A stretch of DNA of 64,000 nt from contig NC_082731.1 in assembly GCF_030144855.1 (NCBI RefSeq), positions 16,244,001 through 16,308,000 of the forward strand. The letters run 5' to 3'. The notes under the pieces were generated by a model. The model did not search any database, had not been told where the DNA came from, and was given only the letters and a program-made list of their open reading frames with translations. This document shows, piece by piece, positions 27,410 to 64,000 of this stretch. How positions within the stretch are numbered: position 1 is the stretch's first letter; each line of letters begins with the position of its first letter. This DNA is from Hypanus sabinus. Its lineage: Eukaryota. Both the position numbers and the translations under genes were made by a program.

Positions 27410-29050
27410 GGAGGGGCGGCCCACAAATAAACGTGAAGAGCCAAGAGGAACGAGGGAGAGGAGGGAATGTGAGTTGGGGGCGTTACTGGAATCAGGGCGG
27501 AATGGGGGCCGGCTTGCGGACGGCTGCTGAAGCTGGAGGGTCGACTCTGAGAAATTGAGCTGAGGGGAAATGGGGTAACCTAGAGACAGGTGGGGGGGGG
27601 GAGTCAGGAATTGCAGACCTGGAAGAAAGAGAAAGGACGATCCAGAAACCCGGGGCTGTGGAGGGGGGGGGGGGAAGTGAGCCAAATATGGGGGAAATGG
27701 TGATGGGGGAAGAGGGCAACAGAGAGGGGGAGAAGGGAACAGGGCACCCCACATAAGAGTTACGGGGTGGCGGTTGGGGAGGAAGGGGAGTAAGTGGGGA
27801 ACTCAATGGCAGCTGAAAGGATCGGCGGGGAAGGGGTCCGGGACCACCAAATGACGGGGAATGTCGACAGAGCGAGGGCAGGGAAGAGGCAAGTGGCGCC
27901 TTAGAAAGGAGGGGAGGGTTTGAGGGTAAGGGGAGAGATCCAGAAACGGGGAAGGGCGGGGAGGGAGAGACAGGTCACGGTGTGAGGTGAAAAGCAGATG
28001 GGGACAGGGGGCAACCAGACATCAATTATAATGTGGGAAAAAGGAATTTACCCTGATAACGGGTGTGGGCCCCAGAGATTTCAGGATACAAAGACTGAAA
28101 GGGGAAGAGAACGACCAGTAGATGGGGTGTGGGGAGGGGGATTAAAAAGACCCAGAGAGAGAGGGAACTAAGCTGGTGACAAAGAGACGACTGAGGGGGT
28201 GAGTACGTGGGAAGGGGCAACCCAGAAACCAAATGAGAGAGTGACGGTGTCAGATGAGGGGTAGATGATGCAAGGGGGCGAGCCAGAGATGGGTGGAGGG
28301 AAGGGTGATTCAGGGAAGGGGGGGCGACCCAGGCAGAGCATGGGTGGAAGGGGGCGTCACAGAGACCAGGGAGAGGTGGTGCTAAACAGGAGGGTTAAGA
28401 GGGCAACATAGAGGCAGGGAGTGGGGGTAAATAAAGAATCCTCACATGGCAGGTGGTGACCTGGGGGGAGGGAGGGGCAATCAAGACACAGGGGAGGTAG
28501 TAAGGCGGTGACAGAGACGATAGGGTAACTGAGTGGTAAAGGGGCGAACAAGAGACAGGAGAAGGGGGAAACTGGGACCCAGGGAGGGAATAGTACGAGG
28601 AGAGGAGAATGATCCAGAAATGGGAGATATGGGCGGGGATTTGGGATGGGGTAAAGTGTGGACCCAGAGGTGGGAGACAGGGTTGGGGGAAAAGAGGTTT
28701 ACCTAGAGAAGGGGGTAACATTTAAACCGGTGGGGGTAGGGAGAATGATAGGGGTGGACCCCGACAGGGAGAGGGGGAAGGGCACGACCCAGAAACTCGA
28801 GGCGGTGGGGGGGGGGGAGGGCCATGCGGTAAAAAGGACGAACGGAATATATTAATGGGGAAACCCAGTCGCAGGAAGGGGGCAACACAGTGATAACATA
28901 AGAGTTAATGTGTTAACCCAGGGTCGGGGTAGGTGAGGGACTGGGGAAGAGGGCATCCTCATTGATGGGAGGAGGGTGTAGAAAAAGGGGGAGAGGGGGT
29001 GATCCAGAGACGGGACTGGGGGGGGGGAGGGTTGGTGGAGATAGGGTGAA
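27410..29050 (+). repeat. G-rich cryptic satellite tract
   Basis: Recurring GGCAACCCAGAAAC/GACCCAGAGA variants among G runs. Confidence 0.7.
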
Positions 29051-30265
29051 GGAAACCACTGCTCTCAAAACAAAAATTGTTGCATATCTCAAGTTTTCAA
29101 AAGACCACCTTGATATTCCACAATGCACCTGGGACAACGTTCTGTGGACAGATGAGACAAAAGTTCAACTTCTTGGCAAAAATGCACACCACTGTGTTTG
29201 GTGGGAAAAGGGCAGTGCACACCAACAGCAAAACCTCATCCCAACTGTGAAGCGCGGTGGACGGAGCATCGCGGTTTGGGGCTGCTTTGCTGCCTCAGGG
29301 CCTGGACAGCTGGAGGGAACAATGAATTCAAGACTGTGAGGAGGAATGGCCTAAAATTCATCCAAGTCGATGTGCAGGACTGATCAACAGTTACCGGAAA
29401 TGTTTGATTGAAGTTATTGCTGCATGAGGGGGACACACCAGTTCCTGAAAGCAAAGGTTCTCATACTTTTTCCAACAAATACATGTAATATTGGGTCATT
29501 TTTCTCAATATACGAATGTAAAGAGGGTTTCTTCTTTTTGTTAACTAGCAGGAATGCTAATTTACTGATAACGAGAATGGTATTCCTTTGTAAACCAAAT
29601 GGGGATTAATGTTCTTTCTTCTGAGTCTGTAAGCTTTTGTTGACGGGCTTTTGGGGAGATCGGCACGAGGGGGTCGAGAGAGAGGACGCAATGCTCTAAG
29701 CTGGGCGAGGATCGGACCCCAAAGGGGGGTCCGAGGCCGGGAGATTCTCCGAGGGGGGGGGGGGGTATGAAGCTAGATGTGCTTGGTTGACCACTCGGAG
29801 GGTCCTGAGCTGTTTGGAGAGTCCGAGGAGTTCGGAGGGTCCTGAGCTGCGAGTCGAGGAGTTCGGAGGGGATCGAATGGTGGCCAGAAGACTTCAGAAA
29901 TTGAGCTCCAACGGTTGTGCGCGAAGTGGTTTGGGCTTTGATAAGTTTGGCGCCTTTTCTTTAATTTTCTCTTCATATATACTGTATCGTTATTAATCAC
30001 TTAGTTATAGTAACCTTTATAAATTGTACTCATTTAATCGCATATGGTGTACTGTCTGTTTTTGGGTGAGGCGGGGACATCACACAGTATCCACACCAGC
30101 TGATTACCCAGTTTGGCGGAGCCGAAGGCTGCTCCCCCTAGACGAGAATGAGCTGAGCGAGCCTGAGGCGACCCAGGGGGTTACACGAATGAACAAGTAT
30201 GATGTTTTTGTGTTCATTATTTAAGTTAGGTTCTCTTTATCTAGTTGTCGGACTTACGTGACTTA
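29051..30265 (+). mobile_element. Tc1-like DNA transposon remnant (internally deleted transposase)
   Basis: WDNVLWTDETKVQLLG...LIPTVKRGGRSIAVWGCFAASGPG and C-terminal EEWPKI..RCAGLINSYRKCL motifs. Confidence 0.88.
29517..30185. mobile_element. Solo LTR (669 bp, Gypsy/ERV1-type) nested in the Tc1 remnant
   Basis: TGTAA...TTACA termini; 4-bp TSD CGAA at 29513-29516 and 30186-30189; Tc1 sequence resumes afterwards. Confidence 0.85.
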
Positions 30266-32139: not shown

Positions 32140-33978
32140 TTAACTATTAGCTTGCATCTCACTAAACTTTTCCCTTGTGTGAATTCGGCCATGCTTCATA
32201 AGGTGGGATAATTGAGTGAATCCCTTCCCACAATCTGAGCAGGTGAATGGCCTCTCCCCAGTGTGAATTCGCTGGTGTACCTTCAGTTGAGATGACTGAA
32301 TGAATCCCTTCCCACAGTCCGAGCAGGTGAATGGCATCTCCCCAGTGTGAACTGACTGATGTGCCAGAAGGTCAGATGACCGAGTGAATCCCTTCCCACA
32401 CTCAGAGCAGATGAACGGCCTCTCCCCAGTGTGAACTGACTGATGTGCCTGTAGGTGGGATGACCGAGTGAATCCCTTCCCACATTCAGAGCAGATGAAT
32501 GGCCTCTCCCCAGTGTGAACTGACTGATGTGTCTGTAGGTGGGATGACCGAGTGAATCCCTTCCCACATACAGTGCAGGTAAAAGGCCTCTCCCCAGTGT
32601 GAACTCGCTGATGTACATTCAGTTGAGAGGACTGAGTGAATCCCTTCCCACAATCTGAGCAGATGAATGGCGTCTCCCCAGTGTGAACAGTCTGGTGCGT
32701 TTGTAAGTGAGATGATCGAGTGAATCCTTTCCCACATTCAGAGCAGATGAATGGCCTCTCCCCAGTGTGAATTCGCTGATGTACCTTCAGTTGAGATGAC
32801 TGAGTAAATCCCTTCCCACAGTCTGAGCAGGTGAACGGCCTCTCCCCGGTGTGGACTGACTGGTGTGTCTGCAGGTGGGATAACTGAGTGAATCCCTTCC
32901 CACATTCAGTGCAGATATACGGCCTCTCCCCGGTGTGAACTCTCTGGTGTGTCAACAGATCAGACGACCGAGTGAATCCCTTCTCACACACGGAACAGAT
33001 AAATGGCCTCTCCCCAGTGTGAACTCGCTGGTGTCTCTGCAGGTGAGATGGGTGGGTAAATGTCTTCCCACACTCTGGGCAGACGAATGGCCTCTCCCCG
33101 GAGTGAACTCGCTGATGTACCTTCAGTTGAGATGACTGAGTGAATCCCTTCCCGCAACCTGAGCAGGTGAACGGCTTCTCCCCAGTGTGAACTCGCTGGT
33201 GTGTCAGCAGATCAGATGACCGAGTGAATCCCTTCCCACACTCAGAGCAGATGTACGGCCTCTCACCTGTGTGAAACCGCATGTGCGTGAGCAGATCCGA
33301 TGACCGAGTGAAGCTCTTCCCACACACGGAACAGATGAACGGCCTCTCCCCGGTGTGAACTCGCTGGTGTGTCAGTAGGTGAGATGGGTAAGTGAATGTC
33401 TTCCCACAGTCCGAGCAGATGAATGGTCGTGCCCCAGTGTGAACTAACTGGTGTGTCTGTAGATACGATGATCGAGTAAAACACTTCCCACATTCCGAGC
33501 AGATGAACGGCCTCTCCCCAGTGTGAACTGACCGGTGTGTCTGCAGGTAGGAAGACCGGGTGAATCCCTTCCCACATTCAGAGCAGATGTACGGCCTCTC
33601 CCCAGTGTGAATTCGTTGGTGTCTCCGCAGTTCAGATGATCGAATATACGACTTGCCACAGTCGGAGCAGATGAACGGCCTCTCCTTGGAGTAAACTGGC
33701 TGGTGTCTCATCAGGTCGGACGAATCAGTGAATCCCTCCCCGGACACGGAAGAGATGAATAGTCTCTGCTCCTTCTGAACTTGCTGGTGTGTCTGCAGCT
33801 GGCTGAGTGAGTGAATCTCTTCCCACATATGGAAACGGTGAACTGTCTCACTAAGCTCTGAACTCGCTGATGTATCTTCCGGCTGGTGACTGAGTACATC
33901 CCCTCCCACGCACAGAAACGGTGAATGGCCGTAACCCAGTGTGAACTCACTGTCGGTGGGCTGAGCGAGTGAATCCAT
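32140..33978 (-). CDS. C2H2 zinc-finger protein (paralog C), 18 fingers
   Basis: Open frame; first ATG at 33978, while the ATG homologous to paralogs B/D is at 33711; acceptor at 34556; polyA signal 31969-31974. Confidence 0.92.
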   Translation of the reverse strand: MDSLAQPTDSEFTLGYGHSPFLCVGGDVLSHQPEDTSASSELSETVHRFHMWEEIHSLSQLQTHQQVQKEQRLFISSVSGEGFTDSSDLMRHQPVYSKERPFICSDCGKSYIRSSELRRHQRIHTGERPYICSECGKGFTRSSYLQTHRSVHTGERPFICSECGKCFTRSSYLQTHQLVHTGARPFICSDCGKTFTYPSHLLTHQRVHTGERPFICSVCGKSFTRSSDLLTHMRFHTGERPYICSECGKGFTRSSDLLTHQRVHTGEKPFTCSGCGKGFTQSSQLKVHQRVHSGERPFVCPECGKTFTHPSHLQRHQRVHTGERPFICSVCEKGFTRSSDLLTHQRVHTGERPYICTECGKGFTQLSHLQTHQSVHTGERPFTCSDCGKGFTQSSQLKVHQRIHTGERPFICSECGKGFTRSSHLQTHQTVHTGETPFICSDCGKGFTQSSQLNVHQRVHTGERPFTCTVCGKGFTRSSHLQTHQSVHTGERPFICSECGKGFTRSSHLQAHQSVHTGERPFICSECGKGFTRSSDLLAHQSVHTGEMPFTCSDCGKGFIQSSQLKVHQRIHTGERPFTCSDCGKGFTQLSHLMKHGRIHTREKFSEMQANS

Positions 33979-34109
33979 TCTCACGCTGAGAGCGGGGGAA
34001 TGGTATCGCCCGCTTATCAATTCTCTAGAAATTCATCAAGTCAGGCGTCAGACATTGAGAATCCGTCGCGCAAACGGTCGATGAACTGACCTCTAGTAAC
34101 AAGACCAGA

Positions 34110-36165: not shown

Positions 36166-36369
36166 TGGACTTGGGGGTAACAAGGTCCTGAACCACAGGA
36201 GGTGTTACAAAGCTGCATCTCTTTTTGCTGTACCGCACTAATTGATATTTTCAGTGACTGAATGAGACGCTTCAGCCGAGAACTGTATCTTTGTTCCCAG
36301 CTCCCGGTGCTTGGATTTAGACAGCTACAACCCGGCAGTATCTGAGAGAAGCATCCGAACAAGTCTTAC

Positions 36370-36828
36370 ATACTGCCGGGGGGGATCACTCCTGACAGTC
36401 CCGACACCCAGAAAATGACAAGAAGGAGACCCCCGACAATCCGTCACCGTCGCACCGGTACGCATGCGCTGCAGAAATGGCGCAGCACTTCCGCTCATCA
36501 GCAGAAAAATTTTTTCCCGGGGCCTTGGATGCAGATCGTGGGGCCGGGTCCGAGCCGGGGGTTCGGGGCCGCGGTGTGTCCGGAGCTCGCAGCAATTGTC
36601 GCCCAGTCGGAGAGCGACGCCACCCAGGTAACGAAACCCCCCCGCCCCCGCATACCCGGTCCTACCTGCCCGCCTGCCGGCCATCGACCAGTCTTTTGTC
36701 CGCCGAACGCATGCGCACTTCCCCGAACCCAGCCGCAGCCCTCGCGCCTGCGCGCTTGGTGGGCGGCCCGCCACCGGCGCTTTCTGAGGCGCAGAGGCAT
36801 TTGGGTAAGCGAGATGCCATTCAACGCC
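36370..36828 (-). promoter_or_regulatory. CpG-island promoter/first exon of ZNF C
   Basis: ACGCATGCGC near 36460 and 36707; AAATGGCG 36475-36482; candidate donor GCA|GTATGT near 36373. Confidence 0.72.
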
Positions 36829-36830
36829 GC

Positions 36831-37432
36831 GCACACAAAAAAATGCTGCAGGAACCCAGCAGCCCGGGCCGCATCGACTGGAAAAAGTAAGCAGCCGACG
36901 TTTCGGGCCGGGACTCTTCATGGAGACGGGAGAAAAACGATGAGAAGTTACAGCAAGAGAGTGGGGGGGGGGGGGGAAGAAGTACAAGGTGGTAGGTGGT
37001 AGGTTGAACCGGGAGGGGGAGAGGGGTGAAGGAAAGAGCCGGGAAGTTGATAGGGGAAAGAGATAAAAGGCTGGAGAAGGGCAAGTCTGATGGGAGTGGG
37101 TAGAACACCATGGAGGAAATGGAAAAGAAAGGAGCACCAGAGGGAGGTGTTGGCAGGTAAGGAGAAAGGGTGAGAGAGGGGAATGGTGAAGGGATGGAGG
37201 TAATTAACAGGTTAGAAAAATCAATGTTCATGCCATCATGCTGGAGACTTCCCAAGTGGAATATAAAGTTTTGCTCCTCCAAACTGAGTGTGGCCTCATC
37301 GTGGCAGTAGAGGAGGCCATGGAATGATGTGTCGGAATGGGAATGGGAAATAGAATTGAAATGGGTGGCCACTGACAGGTCCCACTTTTTCTGGTGGACG
37401 AAGTGTAGGTGCTCCGCAAAGAGGTCTCCCAA
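36831..37432 (-). mobile_element. Penelope-like element 3' portion (GIY-YIG endonuclease C-terminus plus degenerate hammerhead)
   Basis: GDLFAEHL..VATHFNS..H..HGLLYC.DEATL.LEEQ.FIFHLGSLQHDGMNIDFS; GAAACGTC box kept but CUGAnGA box broken. Confidence 0.8.
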
Positions 37433-40510: not shown

Positions 40511-40725
40511 ACAACACACAAAATGCTGGTGGAACACAGCAGGCTAGGCAGCATCTATAGGGAGAAGCACTGTCGACGTTTCGGGTTGAGACCCTTCGTC
40601 AGGACTAACCAAAACGTCAACAGTGCTTCTCCCTATAGATGCTGCCTGGCCTGCTGTGTTCTACCAGCATTTTAATGTGTGTGTTGTTTGAATTTCCAGC
40701 ATCTGCAGATTTCCTCGTGTTTGCT
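40511..40725. mobile_element. Fold-back mini Penelope-derived element with an intact hammerhead core (40572-40605, minus)
   Basis: ~65-bp inverted arms; gtc-CTGACGA-agggtctcaaccc-GAAAC-GTC-gac; TSD CAGAAGAGAAATA/CAGAAGAGGAATA at 40498-40510 and 40726-40738. Confidence 0.8.
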
Positions 40726-41272
40726 CAGAAGAGGAATAGTTTTGTTTGCAGCAATTAATGTCAGACGTGTGAATTTAATCATATTTAAAGAGCTCTTTGA
40801 TACGTAGCGTGTCTGTAAGTGGAATTCGGGTAACCCAGTGACTCCCTGTTTGTGTTAGTCGCCCAATGTCATTATGTCTGTGTGCACTTCTGTGAGTTTC
40901 ACCTTCCTGAACAGAACCTGTCTGTTTCTCAGTGAACTTCTCTCTCCTGGTGAACGCACTTGTATGTCTGTAAACGGTTCAATGACCCACCTTTCTCCTG
41001 TGTTTTCTCTCTGTCTGTGTGTGTGTGTGAGAGAGAGAGATTCTCTCTCTATCTATCTATCTAAACCTCTACCTGTTAATGTTTGTTTCTGTACCTGTGA
41101 GTTTNNNNNNNNNNNNNNNNNNNNNNNNNNNNNNNNNNNNNNNNNNNNNNNNNNNNNNNNNNNNNNNNNNNNNNNNNNNNNNNNNNNNNNNNNNNNNNNN
41201 NNNNNNNNNNNNNNNNNNNNNNNNNNNNNNNNNNNNNNNNNNNNNNNNNNNNNNNNNNNNNNNNNNNNNNNN

Positions 41273-43344: not shown

Positions 43345-44654
43345 GACGCGTGGGAGCAGGAGTCACGTGACGCGTCGCAGCAGCTTGGGCTGGAAGTGAA
43401 GTGGGATGGTGTTAGATCGTGGGATCGTGGGGTGGGGGGGGGACTGGCCATCACTCTGAAGAGCAGATACAAAGCCCCTCAGGGCAGTCATGACCGGCAG
43501 TGGCGGGTTGGGCTGGAAAGGAAGCGGGATCGCGGCTCATGGTCAAGAACCACCAGATTCTCTGCCCAACCTCAGACCCGAAGCAAATCCACCACCACCT
43601 GCTCAACCCCTAGACCTCAGGACCAAGGGGTCCACCTTTACGCCTAATCCCACCGCCCAACCTCCCTCCCCATCAGCTGAGGACCTGCTGTTCATAAGCA
43701 CATCCCCAACAACCCTATCCCTGGGCATTGATACTGAATACCGGGGACCTGGCCCCACGCCACTAACTAACACCCACCCTCTGAGACATAAATTCACGCC
43801 CCCCCACCACACACATACACACACACACACACACAATTCGACCCCACCCCCGGGACCGGATTCTCACCGTTCATGCCTCTGAGTTTCCAATCCCATTAAC
43901 CCCACTGCCTGGGAACTGATCTTTCCACTCTAATCTCCCTCTGTCCCTTTCCCAGTTTAAAATCTCCCCACACCCAGCTCCCTCAGCCCCTGCCCATCGC
44001 TGACTCTATGCCACCACGTGGGGCTACAGGCACTGGGCCACGTTGGCAGGGGTTCCGACTAACACTTTCCAGCTGCCGCCACGGGCGTTCCAGGTGAAGG
44101 CTGCGGACAGAGCATAACCGAGTGCCGGGTTGCGCGGTGGGAAAATCCCCGTCCCCGGTCTGGGGTGATCAGGCTCCCGGCTAGCACAGCCGCAGATCCC
44201 GCCGTGAGCAGACACGGACTGAAAGTCTCCCAGCATCCCAATTACAGGCAAACCCCCTACGGGCAAGCCTGGCCCAACTCAGCTTCTGGGTGTGGTGACA
44301 GGCAACCCGTTTAACTCTGTAAACCTGGTCTCAGCTTCAAGCGACCCCCGTGAACAAGCGCAGTTACAGCCGCTCCCGATCTCAGCCGCAGGTAAACACA
44401 TCGACTGTGTCACCATGTATCCCCGGGCCCCAGCTACGGTAAAACATTACCCAACTCAGCTACAGTAAACCCTGAGTGAACGCGACTGAATGTGCCTCTC
44501 AGCTACAGACAACCCTGCTTCCTCCCCTCCGATCTCACCACCTCAGTCAGATCCCTCCTAACACACCCCTCCCCTCTTCCCACAGGTCTGGTCAAAGAGG
44601 TACGTTTCCCTGGCGCACACCCCCGGTGTCTGTCTCCCTCCCTCCCTCACCTAC

Positions 44655-44787
44655 CTATCAGGTAGTTGCATTGCCTGTGGAAGACTCGGACAACGCCGAT
44701 CTCAAGCTGGGCCGAGAGGTAGAGGGAGAATCGAGGCCTGGAGGTGTTGGGGTAGGGCGGCAGGACCTGTATCTGACTGTCTGTCTA
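44655..44787 (-). pseudogene. rec8: Orphan frameshifted exon of meiotic cohesin REC8 (N-terminal kleisin domain)
   Basis: Translates to QVLPPYPNTSRPRFSLYLSAQLEIGVVRVFHRQCNYLI versus recalled human REC8 RVQPPQPGLPRPRFSLYLSAQLQIGVIRVYSQQCQYLV; acceptor CCCTGCAG and donor G|GTAGGT. Confidence 0.85.
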
Positions 44788-45284
44788 CTGCAGGGAGATG
44801 AACAGAGGGTCACAGCAGCTGGTGGGCGGGGTGGGAAGGGGAGTGTGAGGCGGAGAACGCCGATCTGGACGCGGCTGTCCCAGGAGTGACCTGCAGCAGG
44901 AGACCTAGGGAAGTATAAATAGTTCCCTGGGATGCAATGAGGGAACACGTGGATATACGAGGGGTAGAAGGAGTCCATTTTCGTAGAAGGGGTGGGGAGG
45001 GGCTTTCAGGGGAGAGGCGGAAAGGGGGAAGTGTATGAGCAGAGTTTGTGGGTTCTAAATCAGTCAGTGCATTGCGGGGAGAAGGCAGGAAAATGTGGTC
45101 GAGAGGGATTATAAATCAGCAATGATGGAAAGCCGGTGCGACCCGACGGGCTGAATGGCCTAACCCTACTCCTGTGTCTTAAGGTCCGGGTGTTGGATAG
45201 AGCTCTACAGCTCACGAACAGGGGTAAAGGTGGCGGGGAGGGGGGAGCAGGGGGGTGGAAGTGCGCGACGCAGAGACTGACGGT

Positions 45285-45680
45285 AAACACAAAAGTTCAC
45301 TGCAGATGCTGTGGTCAAATCAAGACGTATAAAAACGCTGGAGAAACTCAACAGGTCGGGCAGCATCGAATTCTCCAACTTTCGGTAATGCCCTCCCTCT
45401 CCCTTCCCCCATCCCACCTTCACTCTGCCTCCTTCTCCAGCTGCCTCTCACCTCTCATGACTCTGCCTTCTTCTACTACCCATAGTGCTTAAGATTCCTG
45501 CTTCACCTCTCCTGCCTATCCCCTCCCCCACCCCTTGATCTTTGCTCTGATTGGTTTTCCACCCTCCCCCCACCTGCCCCCTCCTTCTTCAGTCCTGACG
45601 AAGGGTTTCGACCCGAAACGTCGACTGCTCCTTTCCACGACCTGCTGCCCGACCTGCTGAGTTCCTCCAGCTTGTTTGTA
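45285..45680 (+). mobile_element. Penelope-derived element with an inverted 5' segment
   Basis: Inverted ctggagaaactcaacaggtcgggcagc arm, end of the GIY-YIG ORF (FSNFR*), pyrimidine-rich UTR and hammerhead. Confidence 0.75.
45590..45627 (+). ncRNA. Minimal type-I hammerhead ribozyme motif (best copy)
   Basis: Stem I CAGTC/GACTG; CTGACGA 45595-45601; stem II GGGT-TTCG-ACCC; GAAA 45615-45618; loopless stem III AC/GT; GTC cleavage triplet ending at 45622. Confidence 0.8.
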
Positions 45681-45689
45681 TGTCAGAGA

Positions 45690-48600
45690 CTGATGGGTTT
45701 GGAAGGGTGCGCCCCAGCGAGGGGAAGAGGCGACCGTGAATCAGAATGGCGACGGAGTGGGGGGGGGGGGAGCTCAGGTATGTAGGGGACAAAGAGTGGG
45801 GAGGTGGGGTGGTCAGAGAATGGAATGGAATGGAATGGAAGGAATGAGAGGGCATTGGCGTGGGGGCGTCACGGAAACAGGAGGGATGGGTTGCGTCGTG
45901 AGGAGTGTTGAGGGACGTCCTAGTGATGAGGGTGAGCGTTGTCCCAGAGACCAGGTAATGGGTGGGGGGGGGGGGGGAAGAAGCTTCTCAGGCTGTGGGG
46001 GGGGGGAGGGAGTAAATGAGTTTTCTTGCAGATGGGGAGGAGTAATGGGAAGGGGACACCCACGAGTTGTCCCAGACATGGGGAAAAGTGGGACAGGGTG
46101 GAGAGGGGAGGCTTCCCAGAGAGTGGGAAGGAAAGGGAGCACCCTGGAGACCGGGTGTGTGGGGGATGAGCACATCAGAGATGGGGAGGGAGGAGGCGGG
46201 ATGTGGGGAAGGACGCAGCAGAGTTTGGGAGGGGGGAGAGGTGGCGCCAAAGAAATAAGTAGAGGGAGGGACACCTCAAAGACGTGGGGGTGGTGTTAGA
46301 GGGTTTAGGGTCTATCCAGGGATGGGAGGGGGAGTGGGGTAAGATGTGGCAAGAGAGAAGAAGGGGTACGGGGTGACCCAGAGAAAGAGGAGATAGGAAG
46401 GGAAGGGGGGGCAACACAGGGAAGGCTGGGTGAAGGGTAACCGGGTGTTGTGGTGGGATGAGGGCAATTCACAGAGAGACAGGGGGTCCAGTGGCCGTTC
46501 AAGCTGGTCAGAGGTGGGTGCAGAGGGTGGAGGGCGACACACTACTGCAGAGCTCTGGAGGCAAAGGGGAAACCCAAGAGGGACATGTAAACAGGGCTGA
46601 GTGGGGTGGGGTGGGGTAAGGGGAAAGAGGGCGACCTAGAGAGTGGGGAATGGGGAGAAGGTGATCGAGATGTGGTAAGTATGGGTGGGAGGGGGTAGGA
46701 CCCAGTGAAGATGGGAGGTGGAAAGTGAGTGACCCCAAAGAGGGGATTAGAGGGAAAGGGCAACACACAGGTAGTTGTGAATGATGGTAAGAAGGACAAG
46801 AGTTGGGGGGAAGGGGCATTCTGGACACGGGCGTGAGGGGAACCCAGAATCGGGACTGAGGGTGGAGAGGCAGGGCTAACTAGGCAAGGGAGAGACCAGA
46901 GACTGTGATAGTCAGGGGGTGGAGTAACCCAGAGACGGGGGCGAGGGGGTGACATTGAACTAGTTAGGAGGAAGAGACAGAGGGACAGACAGGGGGAATG
47001 GGGGATCCCAGACCTGCATGAATGAGGGAAGGAGACGGTGATGCAAAGAAGGTATGGAGGGAGGGTGGATGGGGAATGAGATATTGCAGAGATAGGGGAG
47101 CGATAAGGTAGAGACCCATTGGCAAAGGAAGTGGTGGGTTTAAGCGAGGAGGGGGAAGGGGCGTCCCAAAGATGGCGATGGGGGGGGGGGAATAGGGGAC
47201 AATCAAGAGACAGGAGCAATGGAAGGGGAAACCCAAAGATGGATTGGGGGGGTGACCCAGAAAGGTTGGGAAGGGGCAAAGCCAGTGGGGGGAGGGTCGT
47301 TGCAGAGGCGGCAGTAGCCGGAAGGGGCAAAAGAGATATGGGGCTGAGGAGCAAGAGCTGACCCAGAAACGGGGGGACGTTGGGGGAAATAAGCCGATTT
47401 GGAGAAGAGCAAGTGGGATGGGGTGACAAAGACACGGTGAGGAGGGCTGTGGGAAGGGAGGAAGGGGGTCTACCTGGAGAGGGGCAACACAGAAACAGGG
47501 GTTGAGGTTAGAGTTTAATGTAAGTTTTACTATCAGGGTCCGTGTACAGAATGTCATAGGATATCGCCCAGAGATTCATTCACTTGCGGGCATTCACAGT
47601 AAGTACAAAGAAACACAACAGCATATGAGAAAAAACTGCATATAACAAGGACGGACAAACAACCCATGTGCCAAAGACAACAAATTGCGCAAATAGAGAA
47701 AGAAAAACCAAACAATAATAAATAAACAATATTGATAACATGAGTTGTAAAGTCCCAGAAAGACAGTCGCGAGTTTGCGGGATCAGTCCAGCGCAGGGCG
47801 AGTGAAGATATCTTCTCTGGGTTCAGGAGCCTAATGATAAAACTTGTTTTGGAATCTGTGGGACCTTAGGGGGGAAGGGGTGACCCCCAGGTAGGTTTGA
47901 GGTTGTGGGGGGGGGGGCGGAAGGAAGTGGCCAACAGACTGCGGAGACAGGGAGTGTGGGGTACTGGACTCGGGGGAGGGAGGTGGGCTTGGAGACCGGG
48001 ACTGAGGGTGGAGGGCCGACCCAGAGATCCAGAGCTGAGGGGGAATGTGGATAGGCAGAGACAGGTAGGGTGGATGAAGAGGGAGCGAGGACACAGAGAC
48101 AGGGAGACGGGAACGAGTGACGACCCAGAGACGTGGGCCTGAGGGGGAAGAGAGTGACCCAGGGACGGGAGAAGTGGTGCTAGGGTACGGGGCAACTCAG
48201 AGATGGGGTAAAAAAAAGGGAACGGGGCATCTCACAGATGAGTGAGTGGATGGAGGTTAGGGGAGGAATGGAAAGGGGGAGACCAAAAGCGGGTCGGTGC
48301 GTGGAGGGGTGACCCGGGGGGGGGAGTGGGCAATACTAGTTTGGTGAAAGGGTTAGCGGGGAGGGGGTAAGGGATGAACAACTGTCAGGAGATTGTGGAC
48401 TGATGGGGAGGAGGGAAGTGGGGCGTGGTTGGAGAAGGGAGCAATCCAGAAACATGGAGGGGGTTGATCCCGAGGCAGGGGCAGGTGTGGGGTGGGGTGG
48501 GAAAAGGGGGCAAACCAGACATGGTGATAAGCAGGAGAAAGAGAGAAAAGGGTTGACCCGGATAAGGGTTGGGAACCCCAGAGGTGGCAGGAGGGGTAAA

Positions 48601-50935
48601 GAGTGGGCAGTGGGGGTGGCGGTACGACCCAGGGAAGTGATGACATAGGACGAATGGCGGCAGCTCAGAGAGGGTAGGTCGGTGGGAAGGGAGTGTCTCA
48701 GGGATGGTCTGAGAGGCTCGGGGCGAGGGGTAACCCGGAGACAGGGTGAAGTGGTGACCTAGAGACGGGAGCGGGGTCAGGTGGGGAGGGGTCCAGGGTG
48801 CAAGGGGATGAGCCGGAGATGGATGGCGGGAGGGGTGAACCAAAGAGAGAGGGTCGACCAATCCGGGTGGGACATGGATAGAAGGGGTGACACAGAGACG
48901 GAGGGGTGGTGGTAAAGAGAGGAGGGTTGAGGGAGACATAGTGACAGGGGAGTGGGGGATGAAGGGAGAGGACTTGAACGGGAGGGAGCAGGCAAACGGA
49001 AGGTGGTGACCCAGAGAGGGGGGAGAGGGGTAAATGTGAGTGTAGTCAGGGGAGGTAGTCAGGCGGGGGAGGAGTGAAAGGGACGGTGACTGAGAGAGAA
49101 AGGGGCGACCCGGAGATGGAGGGGAGGGGGGAGTGGCAACCATATTCGGTACAGTGAGGGGTTAGGAGAGTGATCTAGTAACGGGAGAGAAGGGGGCGAC
49201 CCGGAGATGGGCAGGCACATGGAATGAGGTGAGGGGTGTCAACGCAGAGATGGGAGGGAGGAGGAAGAGGAAGACCCAGAGAAAGGGGTAATACCTAAAC
49301 TGGGAGGGGGTGGGGGAATGATGAGAGGGTGCAACAGGAGACGGGGAGGGGGGAAAGGCCGAGCCAGAAACCCCAAGGAAGGGGAGGAGGGCAACATGAT
49401 AATGGACAAGCCAGAGATGCGGGGAGGGGGACCCAGAAGGATGGGGTAAGGGAAGGTTGAGGGATTCACCCAGGGACAGTGTGGTTGAAGGAATAGGGAA
49501 AGCGGTCGTCCTCATTGATGCGAGGAAGGTGGGGGAGGGAAAGGGGTAAAACGAGGAGTACAAGGGGGCAGATGAAGGGATGGAGATGGGGAGGTGTTGG
49601 AGTAAAAAGGGGGCCAGAAGGAAGAGACGCAGTCATAGAGGGTGGAGACACAGAGATCTGGGAAGACAATGCCACCGAGAGACAGGGGAGGCAGATGACC
49701 CACTGGCAGGGAGTAAGGGTCGCCAAAGAGATGGGAGGGAGGAGGGGCGACAGACAATTGGAAGAAGTGTGGGTGACTCGGAGGCTGGTGAAACGGGGTA
49801 AGGTGCTGACGCAGAGATGGGGGAAGAGGTGTATGCCAGTGATTGGATGAGCCAGAGATAGGATGAGGGGAGCAGGGTGACCCAGGGACGGGAGGTGAGG
49901 TGGGACCCGGGGTGGGGGATGTTCCAGGAGACGAGTGAGGCTGTGGAGCAAGGGGGAAGGGGTTAGGGGGCAACCACGAACTGAAGGGGTAACAGAGAGG
50001 TGGAAAAGGGCCACACAAGCTTTGGAGAAGGATGGGGGTGTCCCAAGTGTGGGAGAAGTTGGATGTGAGGGACCCAGAGACGGGGGGTGGGTTGAAATGA
50101 GTGACCAAGAGATGGAGGGGGGGGGGATGTGACTAAACATAGGAAACTACAGACGGGGGAGGGGGAAGGGGAGTGATATAGTGAGGGGGGAGGGGATGTC
50201 GTATCACAAAGACGTGGATGAGAGTAAATGGGACAACCAAGAGATGGCGGTAGTGTAGGACATTGTCTGTGAGAGAGGGGAAACAGGAGTGAGCCAGAGC
50301 CTGGGGGTAAGTAGATAAACTAGAGGTGGGGGAAATGGGGGATAAAGGGAGAATTAAGGGCGGGGAGGAGGGGTGTGAGACAGACAGTGGGGGGAGATAA
50401 GGGCGACCCAGGGACGGAGCGGGTGGTGTTGACCCAGAGGCGGAGGAACTGGTTGAATGGGAGGAAGGGAGAAGAGGGAGATTCAAGAGATTGACCCAGA
50501 GTGTACGGGGGCACCCTGAGGTGGAAAGGGTAAGGTACTGAGGCAGAAGAGGGGGCAAATGAACAGTGAGAGATCCAAAAGGGGAGTGGAGGGAGAGGGG
50601 TGTGAACAAGGGGAATGGAAGCCGGGCGGTAAAGGGAGCGAATCAGAGATGGAGGGAAAACTCAAAGACGAGAGGGGGAGGGAAAGAGGGGGCGACTCAG
50701 AGATGAGCAGGGCGGGCGAATGTGCAGACCCTAAGACAGATGGGAGGATGGCGTTTGGGGCGAGGCAGACAGAGGTGGGTAAACCATAGTTGCCCGAAGA
50801 GGGATGACCCAGAATTGAGGCGAATGGGGAGGTTCACAGAGACGGTGCGGATCGGAGGCGTTTGGAAAGTGAAGGTGACATTGAGTAGTGGGGGGGGGGT
50901 ACGTGGGGGTACAGTGGAGGAGGGGCAGGGTCTCG
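45690..50935 (+). repeat. ~5-kb G-rich cryptic satellite tract
   Basis: Strong G/purine skew; dozens of GGYGACCCAGAGAYGGG variants at irregular spacing. Confidence 0.75.
47505..47865 (-). mobile_element. LINE 3'-tail/SINE-like insertion in the G-rich tract
   Basis: Abrupt A-rich composition change; resembles 1135-1375. Confidence 0.5.
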
Positions 50936-51574
50936 GTGTGGAACAGGTTTCACTCGATTCCACTCAGATCCTGCGGTTTCATTCATTGGTCTGTCTACCT
51001 GGTTCCAGTTCCCTCCTGGTGACAAAGCGTCTCCCAACCGCACCCCTCACCCCCACCCCCACCCAATCCACACACACCAACCTTTCATCATCTTGCTCTA
51101 GTTTCCGGCCCCTAACGTTTCCCCACTCCGGTCTCCGGGCTGCAGGCGACAGAGAGTCGCTGTAAAGAGGCGGCGTCTCCAGAAGTCAGAATCCATCATT
51201 AACGACCCCACCCTCCAGGACTTCCCCTCTTATTCCCCTCCACCCTCAGATTTCGGAATGGTGGATGGAGCCTCGCAGGGAAATCAGGGCGGTTGCTATG
51301 ACAGCTGCGGCATGGCGAGGGTTAAGTGAGGCAGCAGCGGAACGGAGCGCGGTGCTTGTGAGGAATTCTCGCTTTGTACAGCACGGGCACCCGGGACGCG
51401 AGCAGACCAGAACACGGTAACGGAGATGAAGGAGTGAGAAGCACACGGTTCCCATCGGACGATCACTCGAACAAAACTAAGGCCGTTTTAAACCAGATTG
51501 AATGCAAATAAAGGGGTAAATTTCATGTGGCTTTGTTGGTTGTTAACACCTGCAAGAATGTATCACGATTGCCG

Positions 51575-51735
51575 ACAGAGAAGAGGTCATCACCCTGACA
51601 CAGCGGTGTCAAGAAAACAACCTCAATGTCACAAAATCAAAGGAGCTGGTTGTGGACTACAGGGGGAATAGAGACATGTTAACCCCTATTGACATCAATG
51701 GATCTGGGGTTGAGAGGGTGAACAGCTTTAAGTTC
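51575..51735 (+). mobile_element. Rex1/Babar fragment
   Basis: Near-identical to 54128-54287. Confidence 0.75.
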
Positions 51736-52526
51736 AGGTGATCGGTGACGTCACGACAGGGACAGACTGAGGGGAGCAGTAGGGATNNNNNNNNNNNNNN
51801 NNNNNNNNNNNNNNNNNNNNNNNNNNNNNNNNNNNNNNNNNNNNNNNNNNNNNNNNNNNNNNNNNNNNNNNNNNNNNNNNNNNNNNNNNNNNNNNNNNNN
51901 NNNNNNNNNNNNNNNNNNNNNNNNNNNNNNNNGTGGTGGGACAGGAACACTGGTAGGGAGCAGAGGGCCAGAATGGCCTCTCCCCTGTGCACTGTGCTGC
52001 AGAGGCAGTAAGACCCTGAAATACAAGAATTGAAATAGAACTGATTTATTCATGACAAATTCACAATATTAAACTCCAGTCCAATTAAAGGCTAACGTCA
52101 TCGGAAAAAGCCCCTCCCGAGCCCAGTGACCAGGGTTCAGGTGTGATGAACAGCGGCGATAACTGCAGAATCTGACAACATTCACTTTCGAATCTGAAAC
52201 TGGATTCAGTAAAACTAATGGTTAATGATTCAACATGGGTTATTCAAACTGCCTCCGCTGTGTGAATTTGCCGGTGTTTCTGCAGGTGGGGGGTAATCCC
52301 TCTTTGCTGGAACAGGACAGGTGTATTGCCTTACAAGGTGGGGTAACTGGGCGATTCTCTCCCCACACACGGAGCAGGTCTCTCCCGCGTGTGAACTGAC
52401 TGATGTGCCTTCAGGTTGAATGAACCCTCAGTTGTGGCGAGGACTAGGCCTCGGCCTCGGGGTCGCCTCGGACACAGCCCGGGAGAGAGAGCAGGGGCCT
52501 CTGCTGGGGCTGGTCCCTCCCGTCCG

Positions 52527-52647: not shown

Positions 52648-53560
52648 TACTAAACTGGGTGGCAGTGTGACATGCGAAGAGGACGTTAGGAGAATACAGG
52701 GAGACTTGGATAGGCTGGGTGAGTGGGCAGATACTTGGCAGATGTCATTCAATGTGAATAAATGTGAAGTTATCCACTTTGGAAGCAGGAACAAGAGGGC
52801 AGAGTATTGTCTTAACGGTGTAGAGTTAGGTAAGGGAGAAATGCAAAGCGACCTAGGAGTCCTAGTTCATCAGTCTATGAAGGTGAATGAGCAAGTGCAG
52901 CAGGCAGTGAAGAGGGCAAATGGATGTTGGCCTTTGTTACAAGGGGAATTGAGTACAAGAGCAAGGATGTCCTTTTGCATTTGTACAGGGCCCTGGTGAG
53001 ACCACACCTGGAATATTGTGTACAGTTTTGGTCTCCAGGTTTAAGGAAGGACATTCTGGCAATTGAGGAAGTGCAGCGTAGATTCACTAGGTTGATTCCT
53101 GGGATGGCAGGGCTGTCTTACGCAGAGAGATTGGAGAGATTGGGCTTGTACACGCTGGAATTGAGGAGATTGAGAGGGGATCTGATTGAAACGTTTAAGA
53201 TAATTAAAGGATTTGATAGGATTGAGGCAGGAAATATGTTCCAGATGTTGGGAGAGTCCAGTACCAGAGGGCATGGATTGAGAATAAGAGGTCAGTTATT
53301 TAAAACAGAGTTGAGGAAGAGCTACTTCTCCCAGAGAGTTGTGGAGGTGTGGAATGCACTGCCTCGGAAGACGGTGGAGGCCAATTCTCTGGATGCTTTC
53401 AAGAAGGAGCTAGATAGATATCTGATGGATAGGGGAATCAAGGGATATGGGGACAAGGCAGGGACTGGGTATTGATAGTGAATGATCAGCCATGATCTCA
53501 GAATGGCGGTGCAGACTTGAGGGGCTGAATAGTCTACTTCTGCACCTATTGTCTATTGAT
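52648..53560 (+). mobile_element. Young 5'-truncated CR1 LINE (same subfamily as 22192-24923)
   Basis: RT C-terminal ORFs 52667-52999 and 52924-53475; CTATTGTCTATTG tail. Confidence 0.92.
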
Positions 53561-57411: not shown

Positions 57412-58881
57412 TTAATCATCCAGCATCCTGCTCACTGAAACACTTTCTCCAGTTTGAACTTGCCAGTGTTTCACAAGGTGGGACAACTCAGTGCAGGTGA
57501 ACGGCCTCTCCTCAGTGTGAACTTGCTGGTGTATCTGCAGGTGAGATGACTGGGCAAATCCTATCCCACAGTCTGAGCAGGTGAATGGCCGCTCCCCACT
57601 ATGAACTTGCTGGTGTATCTGCAGATGAGATGACTGGGCAAATCCCATCCCACAGTCTGAGCAGGTGAACGGCATTGCCCAGGTGTGAACTAACTGGTGT
57701 GCCAGTAGGTCAGATGACCGAGTGAATCCCTTCCCACAGTCTGAGCAGGTGAACGGCCTCTCCCCAGTGTGAACTGACCGGTGTGTCTGTAGGTGGGACA
57801 ACCGAGTGAATGCCTTCCCACATTCAGAGCAAATGAATGGCCTCTCCCCAGTGTGAACTGACTGGTGAGTCTGTAGGTGGGATGACCGAGTGAATTGTTT
57901 CCCACACTCTGAGCAGGTGAATGGCCTCTCCCCAGTGTGAACTCTCTGATGTACCTTCAATTGAGATGACTGAGTAAATGCCTTCCCACAGTCTGAGCAG
58001 GTGAACGGTCTCTCCCCAGTGTGGACTGACTGGTGTGTCTGTAGGTGGGATGACTGAGTGAATCCCTTCCCACATTCAGTGCAGATATACGGCCTCTCCC
58101 CGGTGTGAACTCTCTGGTGTGTCAATAGATCTGACGACCGAGTAAATCTCTTCCCACAAACGGAACAGATAAACGGTCTCTCCCCAGTGTGAACTCGCTG
58201 GTGTCTCTGCAGGTGAGATGGGTGGGTAAATCCCTTTCCACACTCAGAGCAGGTGAACGGCCTCTCCCCAGTGTGAACTCGCTGATGTATCTTTAGTTGA
58301 GATGACTGAGTGAATCCCTTCCCACAGTCTGAGCAGGTGAACGGCCTCTCCCCAGTGTGAACTCTCTGGTGTGTCAGCAGATCAGATGACCGAGTGAATC
58401 CCTTCCCACACTCAGAGCAGATATACGGCCTCTCACCTGTGTGAAATCGCACGTGTGTGAGCAGATCTGATGAGCGAGTGAATCTCTTCCCACAGACAGA
58501 ACAGATAAATGGTCTCTCCCCAGTGTGAACTCGCTGGTGTGCCTGTAGGTGAGATGGGTGAGTGAATGCCTTCCCACATTCAGAGCAGGTGAACGGCCTC
58601 TCTCCAGTGTGAACTCGCTGATGTCTCTGTAGGTGGGCTGACTGAGTGAATCCCTTCCCACATTCAGAGCAGATGAACGGTCTCTCCCCGGTGTGAACTA
58701 AGTTGTGTGTCTGCAGGTAGGATGACCGGGTGAATCCCTTCCCACATTCAGAGCAAATGTACGGTCTCTCCCCAGTGTGAACTCGCTGGTGTCTCTGCAG
58801 TTCGGAAAAACGAATATATGCCTTCCCACAGTCCGAACAGGTGAACGGCCTCTCCTCAGAGTGAACTCGCTGGTGTCTCAT
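57412..58881 (-). CDS. C2H2 zinc-finger protein (paralog D), 16 intact fingers plus 1 deleted finger
   Basis: ATG at 58881 (MRHQRVH); tandem fingers with TGERPF linkers; acceptor at 59371; polyA signal 57249-57254. Confidence 0.92.
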
Positions 58882-59899
58882 TGCCCAGGATGAATTATAT
58901 CCCTCCCACACTCAGAGCAGGTGAATGGCCTCTCCACACTGTGTACTCCCTGGTGTGTTGGTGGGTGGGCTGAGTGACTGAATCCCTTCTCCCACTGAGA
59001 GCTGACGAATGATATCTCCCTGCTCTCAATTCTCCAGGGGTGGGGGGGGGGCACCAAGTCAGATGAGAGACATACTGAATTCCTCGAACAATCAATGCAG
59101 ATGAAGAACTGATCTCTGGTGAACAAATGCTGGTGTGTCCTCAGCACCCCAGTTCCGGTGGTTTTGACTGAATTTAAACAGAAAACTTCACTTAAAGATA
59201 AATCACGTTTTCATCTGCGATGAGATACCTTTTCATCTTCAAGGATTGACAATGGAAGATTTGGTGTTGCAAAGAAAATGTCTGCTCACTCCTTAAATGT
59301 CTGGTCAAGCACAGCAGAATTGACGTGTTGTGTTTGAGATTCCCGTACACAAATCGTTTGCTGTCTCCAACCTGTAAAAAGATTTACAGAAGACATCAGT
59401 GGGTGAAGGACAGCGTTTGAGATGAGATAATTTCAGTGTCTGTGGAGAGATCTGACATCACACTGTCACAGTGAGGTTCAACACAAGTTGGACGAACAAC
59501 TCGTCGTCTGACTGGGCACGGACCAGGCGGCCAGACCGACCATCGAATTCTCTGACTGTTTGATTGTCCGTATCAGAATGGGCCATTTCTGCCCGTCATC
59601 AATCTGATACTTGGCTCAGATTTGCTTTCTCCATTGAAATTATTTCTAGTTCTGTGCGTGTCCACTGTGCCATAAAGAGCTCATCACATTACATGGCTGA
59701 ACCTGGGGGCTTTCTAAGTATTCTGATCTCCCACCATTCTGGTGACTGACAGTGGTGACTCATCGGTGTCACAGCCAATGAATGTGAAGGGGAGGGCATT
59801 GGTCTGTCTCACTCAGATGTGGCACTTTTGTGATGTGAAAGCTACCGGTCACTGGTCACCCAGGATAAAGGTGTTTGATGTCACTATGTAGCCAGAGAG

Positions 59900-61286: not shown

Positions 61287-61492
61287 ACACACACAAAATG
61301 CTGGTGGAAGACAGCAGGCCAGGCAGCATCTAAAGGGAGAAGCACTGTCGATGTTGGAGTCCTGACGAAGGGTTTCGGCCCGAAATGTCGACAGTACTTC
61401 TCCGTATAGATGCTGCCTGGCCTGCTGTGTTCCACCAGCATTTTGTGTGTGTTGCTTGAATTTCCAGCATCTGCAGATTTCCTCGTGTTTGA
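61287..61492. mobile_element. Fold-back mini Penelope-derived element with a near-intact hammerhead (61359-61392, plus)
   Basis: Inverted arms; gtc-CTGACGA-agggtttcggccc-GAAAT-GTC-gac; same subfamily as 40511-40725. Confidence 0.8.
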
Positions 61493-61899: not shown

Positions 61900-62830
61900 C
61901 CAAGAGAAGGTGGGAGGGGTGAATGGGTAAGGGGATTCCTCAGAAATGCAGGGAAGGACGGCAACTCAAAGACAGGGAGGTGAGGTGGGGAATGAGTGAC
62001 CCAGAGATGGGGAGTAGGGAAGAGAGGGGCAATGACCAGTACATAAGGGAGTGAGGAAGGGGGTGACCTGTTGAATCTGGAGGGGGGAAGGGGGTAACCT
62101 AAAGACCAGGGAGTGTCTGGGGTAATAGGGAGGAGGTGGAAGGGGAAGACCCACAGACGTGTTAGAGGGGCAAAGCGGATGAGCAGAGACCCTGGGCTGT
62201 GGGGTGAAGGGGGCAACCTGGAGTCGGACAGCAATAAACCAGAGACGGTGAGGGGAGGGGAAAGGGGCCGGGTCTGGGGAGAGGGAAACGGGTAGTCCCT
62301 TGACAAGACAGAAGGGAAGTAGGTAACCGACAGAGGAGGGGGAGGTGGGGGGGGGAACAGGAGGCCGGTGGGGGGGGACTGTGGAAGGAGCTGCAGGGAG
62401 AAGGGGAGGGGCAACCCGTAGACAAGGGTGGTGCATAAAGTGGCGACCAAGTGAAGGGGGTGGGGGGGTCCCAGAGATGGGACACGAGACATGAACAGAG
62501 GATGAGACAAAAGAGGGGGAGTGAGGAGTGAAGAGAGCGACCCAGAAATGGGAGAGTGTCGGAGGGGGGGGTGTTGGGGGAGGTACCAAGACATGAGAGA
62601 GGGGCAGTGAGTAGCAGGGAGGTGAAAGGAGCGATTCAAGATGGACGAGGAGTTGGTTACGAGGGCAGGTGAGGAGGGGACCCACTGACGGGTGGCGAGG
62701 TAGTAAGGGCCGATCCACAGAAAGGCTGATCCAGAAATGTGGCGCAGGGACAGAGATGAGGGGACGATGCTGCCCGGGGTGGGAGCGGGAAGACGGAGGG
62801 GGAGGGGGGCCGGGACAGTCGGTGAGGTGC
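61900..62830 (+). repeat. G-rich cryptic satellite tract
   Basis: GTGACCCAGAGATGGGG, GCGACCCAGAAATGGG and GGTCCCAGAGATGGG variants. Confidence 0.7.
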
Positions 62831-63045
62831 TGGTTTGTCTAGGGCTTGGTGTGCAATAGGCGTCACAGGGTAGAATTCAGATCCTGCTGCTGTTTTACCC
62901 ACAGGCACGTTTTCCCATTTCTGTAACACGCACTGGACCGTAGTCCCGGTGCGCAAGTAAATAAAGTTTGAAGGAAGAGCGAGCGCAAGTTGTCGGAGAC
63001 CAGGTGATCGGTGACGTCACTTCACCCAGAGCGGTGACCGTCACG

Positions 63046-63562
63046 ACAGGGACAGACTGAGGGGAGCGGCAGGGATGGATTGAAGGGGAACAGAGAGAGA
63101 GATACAAGAACATCACTACGGGGACAGACTGAGGGGAGCGGCAGGGATGGACTGAAGGGAAACAGAGAGACAAGAACATCACTACGGGGACAGACTGAGG
63201 GGAGCGGCAGGGATGGACTGAAGGGAAACAGAGAGACAAGAACATCACTACGGGGACAGACTGAGGGGAGCGGCAGGGATGGACTGAAGGGGAACACAGA
63301 GAGAGAGAGAGAGATACACGAACATCACTACGGGGACAGACTGAGGGGAGCGGCAGGGATGGACTGAAGGGGAACAGAGAGAGAGAGAGAGAGAGAGAGA
63401 TACACGAACATCACTACGGGGACAGACTGAGGGGAGCGGCAGGGATGGACTGAAGGGGAACACAGAGAGAGAGACAAGAACATCACTACAGGGACAGACT
63501 GAGGGGAGCGGCAGGGATGGGTTGAAGGGGAACAGAGAGAGAGAGGAAAAAACCATTTCTAC
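63046..63562 (+). repeat. Minisatellite, 7 units of 66-86 bp with an internal variable (GA)n, next to a CRE palindrome (63011-63020)
   Basis: GACAGACTGAGGGGAGCGGCAGGGATGG starts at 63051, 63123, 63189, 63255, 63335, 63421 and 63493. Confidence 0.9.
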
Positions 63563-63825
63563 AGGGTGGTGGGACAAACAGACCAGGAACACCAACAGAG
63601 GGGCGGAATGGCCTCTCTAATGTAATAAACTATGCTATGGAGTCAGTCAGGATCAGAAACACAAAATTTAAAATAAAACTGACTTATTTACGACAGATCC
63701 ACAATATTTAACTGCAGACCGATTAAAGGCTGATATCATCGGGACAAACCTCTCCCGTGCCGGGTGACCTGGAGGCGGTGTCGCCCCGCGTTCCTGCGGG
63801 GTTGGGGGCCGGTCTCTCCCGTCTG

Positions 63826-63841
63826 CGCTGCCCCCTAGTGT
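63826..63841 (-). promoter_or_regulatory. CTCF-like motif inside a dispersed repeat
   Basis: Minus strand ACACTAGGGGGCAGCG; flanks resemble 52495-52600. Confidence 0.5.
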
Positions 63842-64000
63842 CCGACCAGTGGAATGACAATCTGGATCGTGTGTGCCTTTGTTCCTCCGCAGACAATTGA
63901 GAACCGCTTGTTCTCGCCGACAACATCCACCGATCATAAACTACAGCGCATGTCACTCAGGGACTTGGGTGAAATATACATCTTTTGTGTGAATGTATGT

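What the first reader, a model, noticed from the sequence alone, without database searches (positions are those of the whole stretch)
44655..44787. Orphan REC8 exon with intact splice sites and an inferred 10-nt frameshift inside a ZNF cluster
Seen: a 133-nt minus-strand exon, missed by the ORF track in this frame, encodes ...PPYPNTSRPRFSLYLSAQLEIGVVRVFHRQCNYLI. Established (recalled sequence): RPRFSLYLSAQL.IGV.RV is the REC8 N-terminal kleisin signature. The exon begins in another frame (RQTVRY ~ EEILNY). Alignment implies 143 nt, so about 10 nt are missing at AGATACAG, which fits an ATAC microhomology deletion (inference). No neighbouring REC8 exons were recognisable. It is therefore probably a DNA-level duplicated fragment rather than a retrocopy.
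Basis: partly seen in the sequence, partly recalled or inferred. Interest (0 to 1): 0.72.

Follow-up and report, generated by a model that had tools for sequence, protein, structure and literature searches.

The report
Broken lone REC8 exon copy
A single stray, damaged copy of one exon of the meiotic cohesin gene REC8 sits between zinc-finger genes in a stingray genome; it is an ordinary gene-fragment pseudogene, not a working gene.

Summary
Window 44655-44787 (minus strand) is a 133-nt copy of the third coding exon of REC8.

- **Identity:** it passes Pfam Rad21_Rec8_N (27.6 bits, cut-off 23.1). Its best match among 1.84 billion proteins is ray REC8 (E 3e-16). Its last 38 codons translate 38/38 identical to Hypanus sabinus and Hemitrygon akajei REC8.
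- **Length:** the true exon is 143 nt in an electric ray (Narcine, L001) and in a tortoise (L002). Alignment to Narcine places one 10-nt gap in the window copy.
- **Damage:** the first 19 nt are also heavily changed (conserved EEIIRY reads RQTVRY). TAG stands in the conserved frame, and the other frame ends in TGA.
- **Splice sites:** acceptor and donor are kept, and a 10-mer sits at the same intron offset as in Narcine. This is a DNA-level copy, not a retrocopy.
- **Isolation:** tblastn and a REC8 profile found no other REC8 exon in 19 kb upstream or 44.6 kb downstream.
- **Neighbours:** three C2H2 zinc-finger arrays and LINE/Penelope repeats.

I could not test the parent locus in this same genome, the TAC microhomology, raw reads or expression. 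Verdict: an ordinary duplicated gene fragment of low interest.

The parts
44655..44787 (-). REC8 exon-3-like pseudo-exon, 133 nt. The orthologous exon is 143 nt.
44656..44769 (-). Well-preserved 38-codon body, QVLPPYPNTS...RQCNYLI. It covers Rad21_Rec8_N profile positions 50-74 and is identical to Hypanus and Hemitrygon REC8 residues 52-89.
   Evidence: 38/38 to both stingrays, 37/38 to Mobula, 36/38 to Narcine; 14 synonymous differences to Narcine and no private non-synonymous ones.
44770..44787 (-). Scrambled 5' end of the exon. TAG lies in the conserved frame and RQTVRY replaces EEIIRY. The junction of the net 10-nt loss is at about 44770/44769. The stretch reads like an AGAC/AGAT tetranucleotide run.
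   Evidence: conserved CEEIIRYILV in all ray REC8 proteins.
44788..44812 (-). Retained 3' end of the upstream intron: pyrimidine tract and CAG acceptor. TGACCCTCTG sits at -25, against -26 in Narcine.
   Evidence: alignment (20 of 26 positions); it is the only 10-mer shared by the 700-nt upstream flanks, and it sits at the same offset.
44647..44654 (-). Retained splice donor, G|GTAGGTGA. The sequence beyond it is intron-like, not REC8 exon 4.
   Evidence: Narcine has G|GTATGTGG at the same place.

Best explanation
This is a non-functional, DNA-level duplicated fragment of the stingray REC8 gene. It holds one coding exon (the third) with both splice sites and a little flanking intron. It lies between C2H2 zinc-finger genes in a repeat-rich cluster. 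It cannot encode REC8. A net loss of 10 nt and a cluster of substitutions in the first 19 nt put a TAG in the conserved frame, and the frame that would continue from exon 2 runs into TGA at the exon's end. The rest of the gene is absent. Shown here: the REC8 identity, the 143-to-133-nt length change, the retained splice sites, the isolation within the window and the ZNF context. Inferred: the body of the exon has no private amino-acid change, yet 14 synonymous differences to Narcine. So the copy left the working stingray gene recently, or has been homogenised with it. The 5' damage looks like one complex event rather than slow decay. An intact parent REC8 elsewhere in this genome is also inferred, from the intact REC8 of two dasyatid stingrays.
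For: REC8 identity. Identity to stingray REC8: 38/38 over residues 52-89. Exon length: 143 nt in Narcine and in a tortoise, 133 nt here, with a single 10-nt gap under three of four affine-gap scoring schemes. Splice sites and the positional intron 10-mer are kept. No other REC8 exon appears by tblastn or profile in 19 kb upstream and 44.6 kb downstream. In Narcine, by contrast, exons 1-2 lie 6-8 kb upstream and exons 4-8 lie 6-12 kb downstream. The window shares nothing else with the Narcine REC8 locus except LINE pieces, and that locus holds no ZNF. The REC8 loci of Hypanus, Hemitrygon and Mobula list no gene nested inside them. The substitution pattern is 14 synonymous to 0 private non-synonymous.
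Against: The parent locus was not seen in this same genome, and the species was not identified beyond 'a stingray'. Stingray REC8 coding ranges are long (113 kb in Hypanus, 187 kb in Mobula), so very long introns cannot be ruled out from distance alone. Four masked N runs (9264-9463, 24924-25100, 41105-41272, 51787-51932) were not read. The very uneven spread of damage is not what simple neutral decay predicts.
Confidence: 0.78

Rival explanations
1. The exon was picked up and moved by a transposable element (transduplication, or 3' transduction by a LINE or Penelope-like element). It would then be part of a mobile unit, possibly present in many copies.
For: The surroundings are repeat-rich. 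A Penelope-like element with a hammerhead motif lies at about 45324-45684 and another dispersed repeat at 45065-45185. LINE ORFs are scattered through the window. AGACAGACA occurs at the exon's start and again 151 nt downstream.
Against: No terminal inverted repeats flank the exon, and no element-end sequences next to it were recognised in the sequence read. 43975-45065 has no second copy in the window. Homology to the REC8 intron runs upstream past the first AGACAGACA, so that repeat is not a target-site duplication. No look-alike was recorded elsewhere in this scan, though that blank carries no weight.
Confidence: 0.1
2. It is the genuine exon 3 of this genome's REC8 gene, set in very long introns. 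The defect is then an assembly error or a real lineage-specific lesion.
For: The REC8 coding range is 113 kb in Hypanus and 187 kb in Mobula, so a 64-kb window holding a single exon is arithmetically possible. The splice sites are intact and the exon body is perfectly conserved.
Against: The annotated REC8 proteins of both dasyatid stingrays, and of all the rays examined, carry intact CEEIIRYILV, which this sequence cannot encode. The defect is a 10-nt loss plus 8 mismatches, not a typical sequencing slip. Three long ZNF ORFs lie in the window, yet no nested gene is listed in any of the three REC8 loci. There is no collinear similarity to the Narcine locus.
Confidence: 0.06
3. The fragment has been put to a new use: as an exon of a non-coding or ZNF transcript, or as a germline source of antisense small RNAs against REC8.
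For: Both splice sites are preserved. The exon has the same orientation as the ZNF arrays at 57412-58911 and 32140-34020. Its 114 nt cover stingray REC8 codons 52-89 with an identical translation.
Against: There is no expression evidence of any kind. A probable 5' region of the downstream ZNF gene lies at about 36.3-37.1 kb, matching the stretch about 3.4 kb upstream of the first array, so the exon seems to be intergenic. Preserved splice sites are expected anyway in a young copy.
Confidence: 0.05

Closest known systems
REC8, the meiotic kleisin subunit of cohesin (Pfam Rad21_Rec8_N, PF04825), as annotated in Hypanus sabinus, Hemitrygon akajei, Mobula hypostoma and Narcine bancroftii
   Same: The fragment corresponds to residues about 43-89. 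This is the third coding exon, which encodes part of the N-terminal domain; in RAD21 structures that domain is the part solved with SMC3 (my own knowledge). Its last 38 codons translate identically to stingray REC8.
   Different: It is one exon out of about 20. It is 10 nt short, its first six codons are scrambled, and stops occur in both usable frames. There is no C-terminal winged-helix part (PF04824). It cannot make a kleisin.
Duplicated (non-processed) pseudogene fragments, as left by segmental duplication in vertebrate genomes
   Same: Exon-intron boundaries are retained, disabling lesions are present, and the fragment lies away from the rest of the gene in a duplication-prone gene cluster.
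   Different: Only about 170 nt of homology could be shown here, because the parent DNA was out of reach. The damage is concentrated in 19 nt while the rest is pristine.
Processed pseudogenes (retrocopies)
   Same: Both are dead copies of a gene.
   Different: A retrocopy would join exon 3 directly to exons 2 and 4 and would lack splice sites. Here intron sequence with a CAG acceptor and a GTAGGT donor flanks the exon.

Membership tests
Rad21/Rec8 kleisin family (REC8 subfamily) | Sequence match to Rad21_Rec8_N above Pfam's curated threshold | tested here: met
   27.6 bits against a cut-off of 23.1. Only profile positions 50-74 of 110 are covered.
Rad21/Rec8 kleisin family (REC8 subfamily) | Closer to REC8 than to RAD21 or RAD21L | tested here: met
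   the closest relatives whose names were looked up are REC8, with ray REC8 at 95-100% identity. RAD21 chains reach only E 0.05-0.6.
Rad21/Rec8 kleisin family (REC8 subfamily) | Complete N-terminal domain plus the C-terminal winged-helix domain (PF04824) in one open reading frame | tested here: not met
   no other REC8 exon in the window; stops in both frames. It is a fragment derived from the family, not a functional member.
Duplicated (non-processed) pseudogene fragment | Exon-intron boundaries of the parent are retained | tested here: met
   acceptor and donor are at the positions of the Narcine exon, and an intron 10-mer sits at the same offset.
Duplicated (non-processed) pseudogene fragment | Disabling lesion relative to the parent | tested here: met
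   133 nt against 143 nt. TAG and TGA stops.
Duplicated (non-processed) pseudogene fragment | An intact parent gene exists elsewhere in the same genome | not testable with these tools
   Intact REC8 is annotated in two dasyatid stingrays. The window's assembly could not be searched, and the stingray REC8 loci returned no DNA.
Processed pseudogene (retrocopy) | Adjacent exons joined without introns; poly(A) tail | tested here: not met
   after ...NYLI the sequence reads G|GTAGGT and translates GR-stop instead of EEIQHT. Before the exon lies a pyrimidine tract and CAG.

The most novel reading that the evidence does not exclude
The REC8 pseudo-exon is transcribed in the germline. Either it is spliced into a ZNF or non-coding transcript through its intact splice sites, or it is read antisense within this repeat-rich cluster. 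In the second case its 114 nt would yield small RNAs that act on the REC8 mRNA, in the way pseudogene-derived small RNAs act in mouse oocytes.
Probability: 0.04. Interest if true: 0.6.

Novelty: new member of a known kind. Interest (0 to 1): 0.15.

Why it matters
It matters little beyond annotation. The fragment could mislead gene predictors into calling a second REC8, or into building a chimeric or over-long REC8 model in stingray genomes. It also shows that ZNF clusters in rays collect pieces of unrelated genes. If the parent locus were compared, the fragment would give a small dated marker of segmental duplication in a slowly evolving genome.

Tried and rejected
- **Candidate exon 2:** KVNVVRFC at 52188-52165 matches the end of REC8 exon 2 in 7 of 8 residues. 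It lies just after a decayed zinc finger with no MFYFPDVLQ... upstream, so it is chance.
- **Low-stringency tblastn:** this gave only proline-rich noise in the G-rich tracts.
- **Parent DNA from stingrays:** the Mobula and Hypanus gene ranges were too long, and the Hemitrygon and Scyliorhinus files too large.
- **Short called ORFs carrying this exon in public assemblies:** none found.
- **Identifying the assembly:** exact look-up of nine window ORFs found none in the collection.
- **Intron homology by free local alignment to Narcine:** not above shuffles. Only the anchored acceptor region holds.
- **Target-site-duplication reading of AGACAGACA:** rejected, because REC8 intron homology continues upstream of it.
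- **Literature:** nothing on a REC8 fragment in rays.
- **Earlier scan notes:** no REC8 note in this genome and no look-alike by sequence.

Full report
**Observation**

The minus strand of window 44655-44787 reads cag|T AGA CAG ACA GTC AGA TAC AGG TCC ... CTG ATA G|gtaggt. Frame 0 gives a stop and then TDSQIQVLPPYPNTSRPRFSLYLSAQLEIGVVRVFHRQCNYLI. Frame 1 starts RQTVRY and ends in TGA. The 43-residue peptide passes Pfam Rad21_Rec8_N (27.6 bits, cut-off 23.1, profile positions 50-74 of 110). Solved RAD21 chains match only weakly, at E 0.05-0.6.

**Which gene**

phmmer over 1.84 billion representative proteins gave 126 hits. The best is 95% identical over 39 residues at E 3e-16. It is REC8 of the devil ray Mobula hypostoma. 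A word-indexed search with that protein brought REC8 of Hypanus sabinus and Narcine bancroftii; Hemitrygon akajei REC8 sits in the Hypanus cluster.

| Species | Identity of the 38 residues from QVLPPYP to NYLI |
|---|---|
| Hypanus sabinus, Hemitrygon akajei (dasyatid stingrays) | 38/38 |
| Mobula hypostoma | 37/38 |
| Narcine bancroftii | 36/38 |
| Scyliorhinus torazame (catshark) | 32/38 |
| A mammal-like REC8 (species not looked up); a caecilian | 26/38 each |

**Exon length and frameshift**

The Narcine REC8 locus could be fetched as L001. Its coding exons were mapped. The homologous exon is L001:13197-13339. It is 143 nt, with ccag|C at its start and ATAG|gtatgt at its end. The tortoise exon, L002:2101-2243, is also 143 nt with the same phases.

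Global alignment of the window copy to Narcine was run under four scoring schemes. Three place one 10-nt gap in the window at TA/CAGGT, about 44770/44769; the fourth splits the same 10 nt into three gaps. All four keep the acceptor and donor aligned.

The only 10-mer shared by the 700-nt upstream flanks is TGACCCTCTG. It sits at -25 in the window and -26 in Narcine. My rough estimate of the chance of a shared 10-mer at the same offset is about 0.002. Homology therefore crosses the acceptor. Free local alignment of the flanks alone is not above shuffles, so no more than about 25 nt of intron can be claimed.

**Pattern of damage**

The 114 nt after the gap differ from Narcine at 14 synonymous positions and at two codons. 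Both of those codons carry the residue of the working stingray protein (L54, N59). There is no private amino-acid change.

In contrast, 8 of the first 19 nt differ from Narcine. The motif C-EEIIRY-ILV, which all ray REC8 proteins examined keep apart from an R-to-S change in Narcine, becomes C-RQTVRY. The changed stretch looks like an AGAC/AGAT tetranucleotide run.

If spliced after REC8 exon 2, the first T would still complete the Cys codon. The frame would then run RQTVRYRSCRPT... to TGA inside the exon. The copy cannot encode REC8.

This uneven damage suggests one complex event, or a gene-conversion boundary, in a young copy rather than long decay. That is an inference. In Narcine the deleted stretch offers only 1-2 nt of microhomology.

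**Isolation**

- tblastn with ray, mammal-like and caecilian REC8 proteins found nothing else in the window, whether whole or in pieces.
- A 7-of-8 match, KVNVVRFC at 52188-52165, follows a decayed zinc finger and is chance.
- A profile of 46 REC8 proteins, run against all stop-to-stop pieces of the six frames, hit only this exon (E 8e-25; next best E 2.5).
- The window offers 19 kb upstream and 44.6 kb downstream. In Narcine, exons 1 and 2 lie 8.2 and 6.3 kb upstream, and exons 4 to 8 lie 6.4-11.6 kb downstream.
- Apart from the exon, the window shares only LINE pieces with the Narcine locus, and that locus holds no zinc-finger array.
- The REC8 coding ranges of Hemitrygon (49.6 kb), Hypanus (113 kb) and Mobula (187 kb) list no nested genes.
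- The window carries three long C2H2 arrays: 14471-15769 (+), 32140-34020 (-) and 57412-58911 (-), with 14-18 fingers each.

**Not a retrocopy**

A pyrimidine tract and CAG precede the exon. G|GTAGGT follows it, and the next residues are GR-stop rather than EEIQHT.

**Limits**

No reads were laid, and neither the gap nor expression could be checked.
- No stingray REC8 DNA could be fetched. The extent and age of the copy and the parent locus in this genome remain open.
- Nine window ORFs were not in the protein collection, so the assembly was not identified.
Together they are 691 nt and could hide at most a few short exons.

**Verdict**

This is a duplicated, non-processed pseudogene fragment of REC8: one exon with its splice sites, disabled at its 5' end, lying between zinc-finger genes. 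It is a known kind of object with a new instance, and its interest is low. The interest score of 0.72 is not.

Noticed in passing
window 14471-15769 (+), 32140-34020 (-), 57412-58911 (-): Three long open C2H2 zinc-finger arrays of 14-18 fingers each, with HTGERPF linkers. Similar ORF-like stretches at 10570-11122 (+) and 36325-37137 (-) lie 2-4 kb upstream of two of them. They may mark the 5' regions of a duplicated ZNF gene unit.
   Followed up: partly
window 45324-45684: Penelope-like element end with an inverted repeat (arms 45324-45365 and 45643-45684). Related copies lie at about 4336-4417, 36833-36919, 40514-40606 and 61358-61450. This was already noted by the scan as a hammerhead-bearing retroelement.
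   Followed up: partly
window 46000-52000 and 62000-64000: Strongly strand-asymmetric G-rich DNA (GC skew 0.3-0.58). It yields long proline/serine-rich pseudo-ORFs on the minus strand, which produce spurious low-complexity tblastn hits.
   Followed up: no
window 22267-24894 (-), 12558-13160 (-), 18043-18426 (+), 52924-53475 (+): A LINE with an endonuclease domain (Pfam Exo_endo_phos_2) and several copies of its C-terminal ORF tail. The same element family occurs in the Narcine REC8 introns at 64-70% identity.
   Followed up: partly
window 44280-44520 (-): The motif (G/A)AGCTGAG recurs five or six times at 40-125-nt intervals just downstream of the pseudo-exon. It is absent from the matching Narcine intron. 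It may be a decayed minisatellite.
   Followed up: partly
window 28962-29339 (+): An ORF with a WTDETK...LLGKN stretch that, from memory, resembles a Tc1/mariner transposase fragment. Pfam gave no hit at E 0.001.
   Followed up: partly
L001 (Narcine bancroftii REC8 locus): The REC8 coding range varies widely: 12.8 kb in a tortoise, 49.6 kb in Hemitrygon, 79 kb in Narcine, 113 kb in Hypanus and 187 kb in Mobula. The introns of the same gene differ greatly in length among rays.
   Followed up: no
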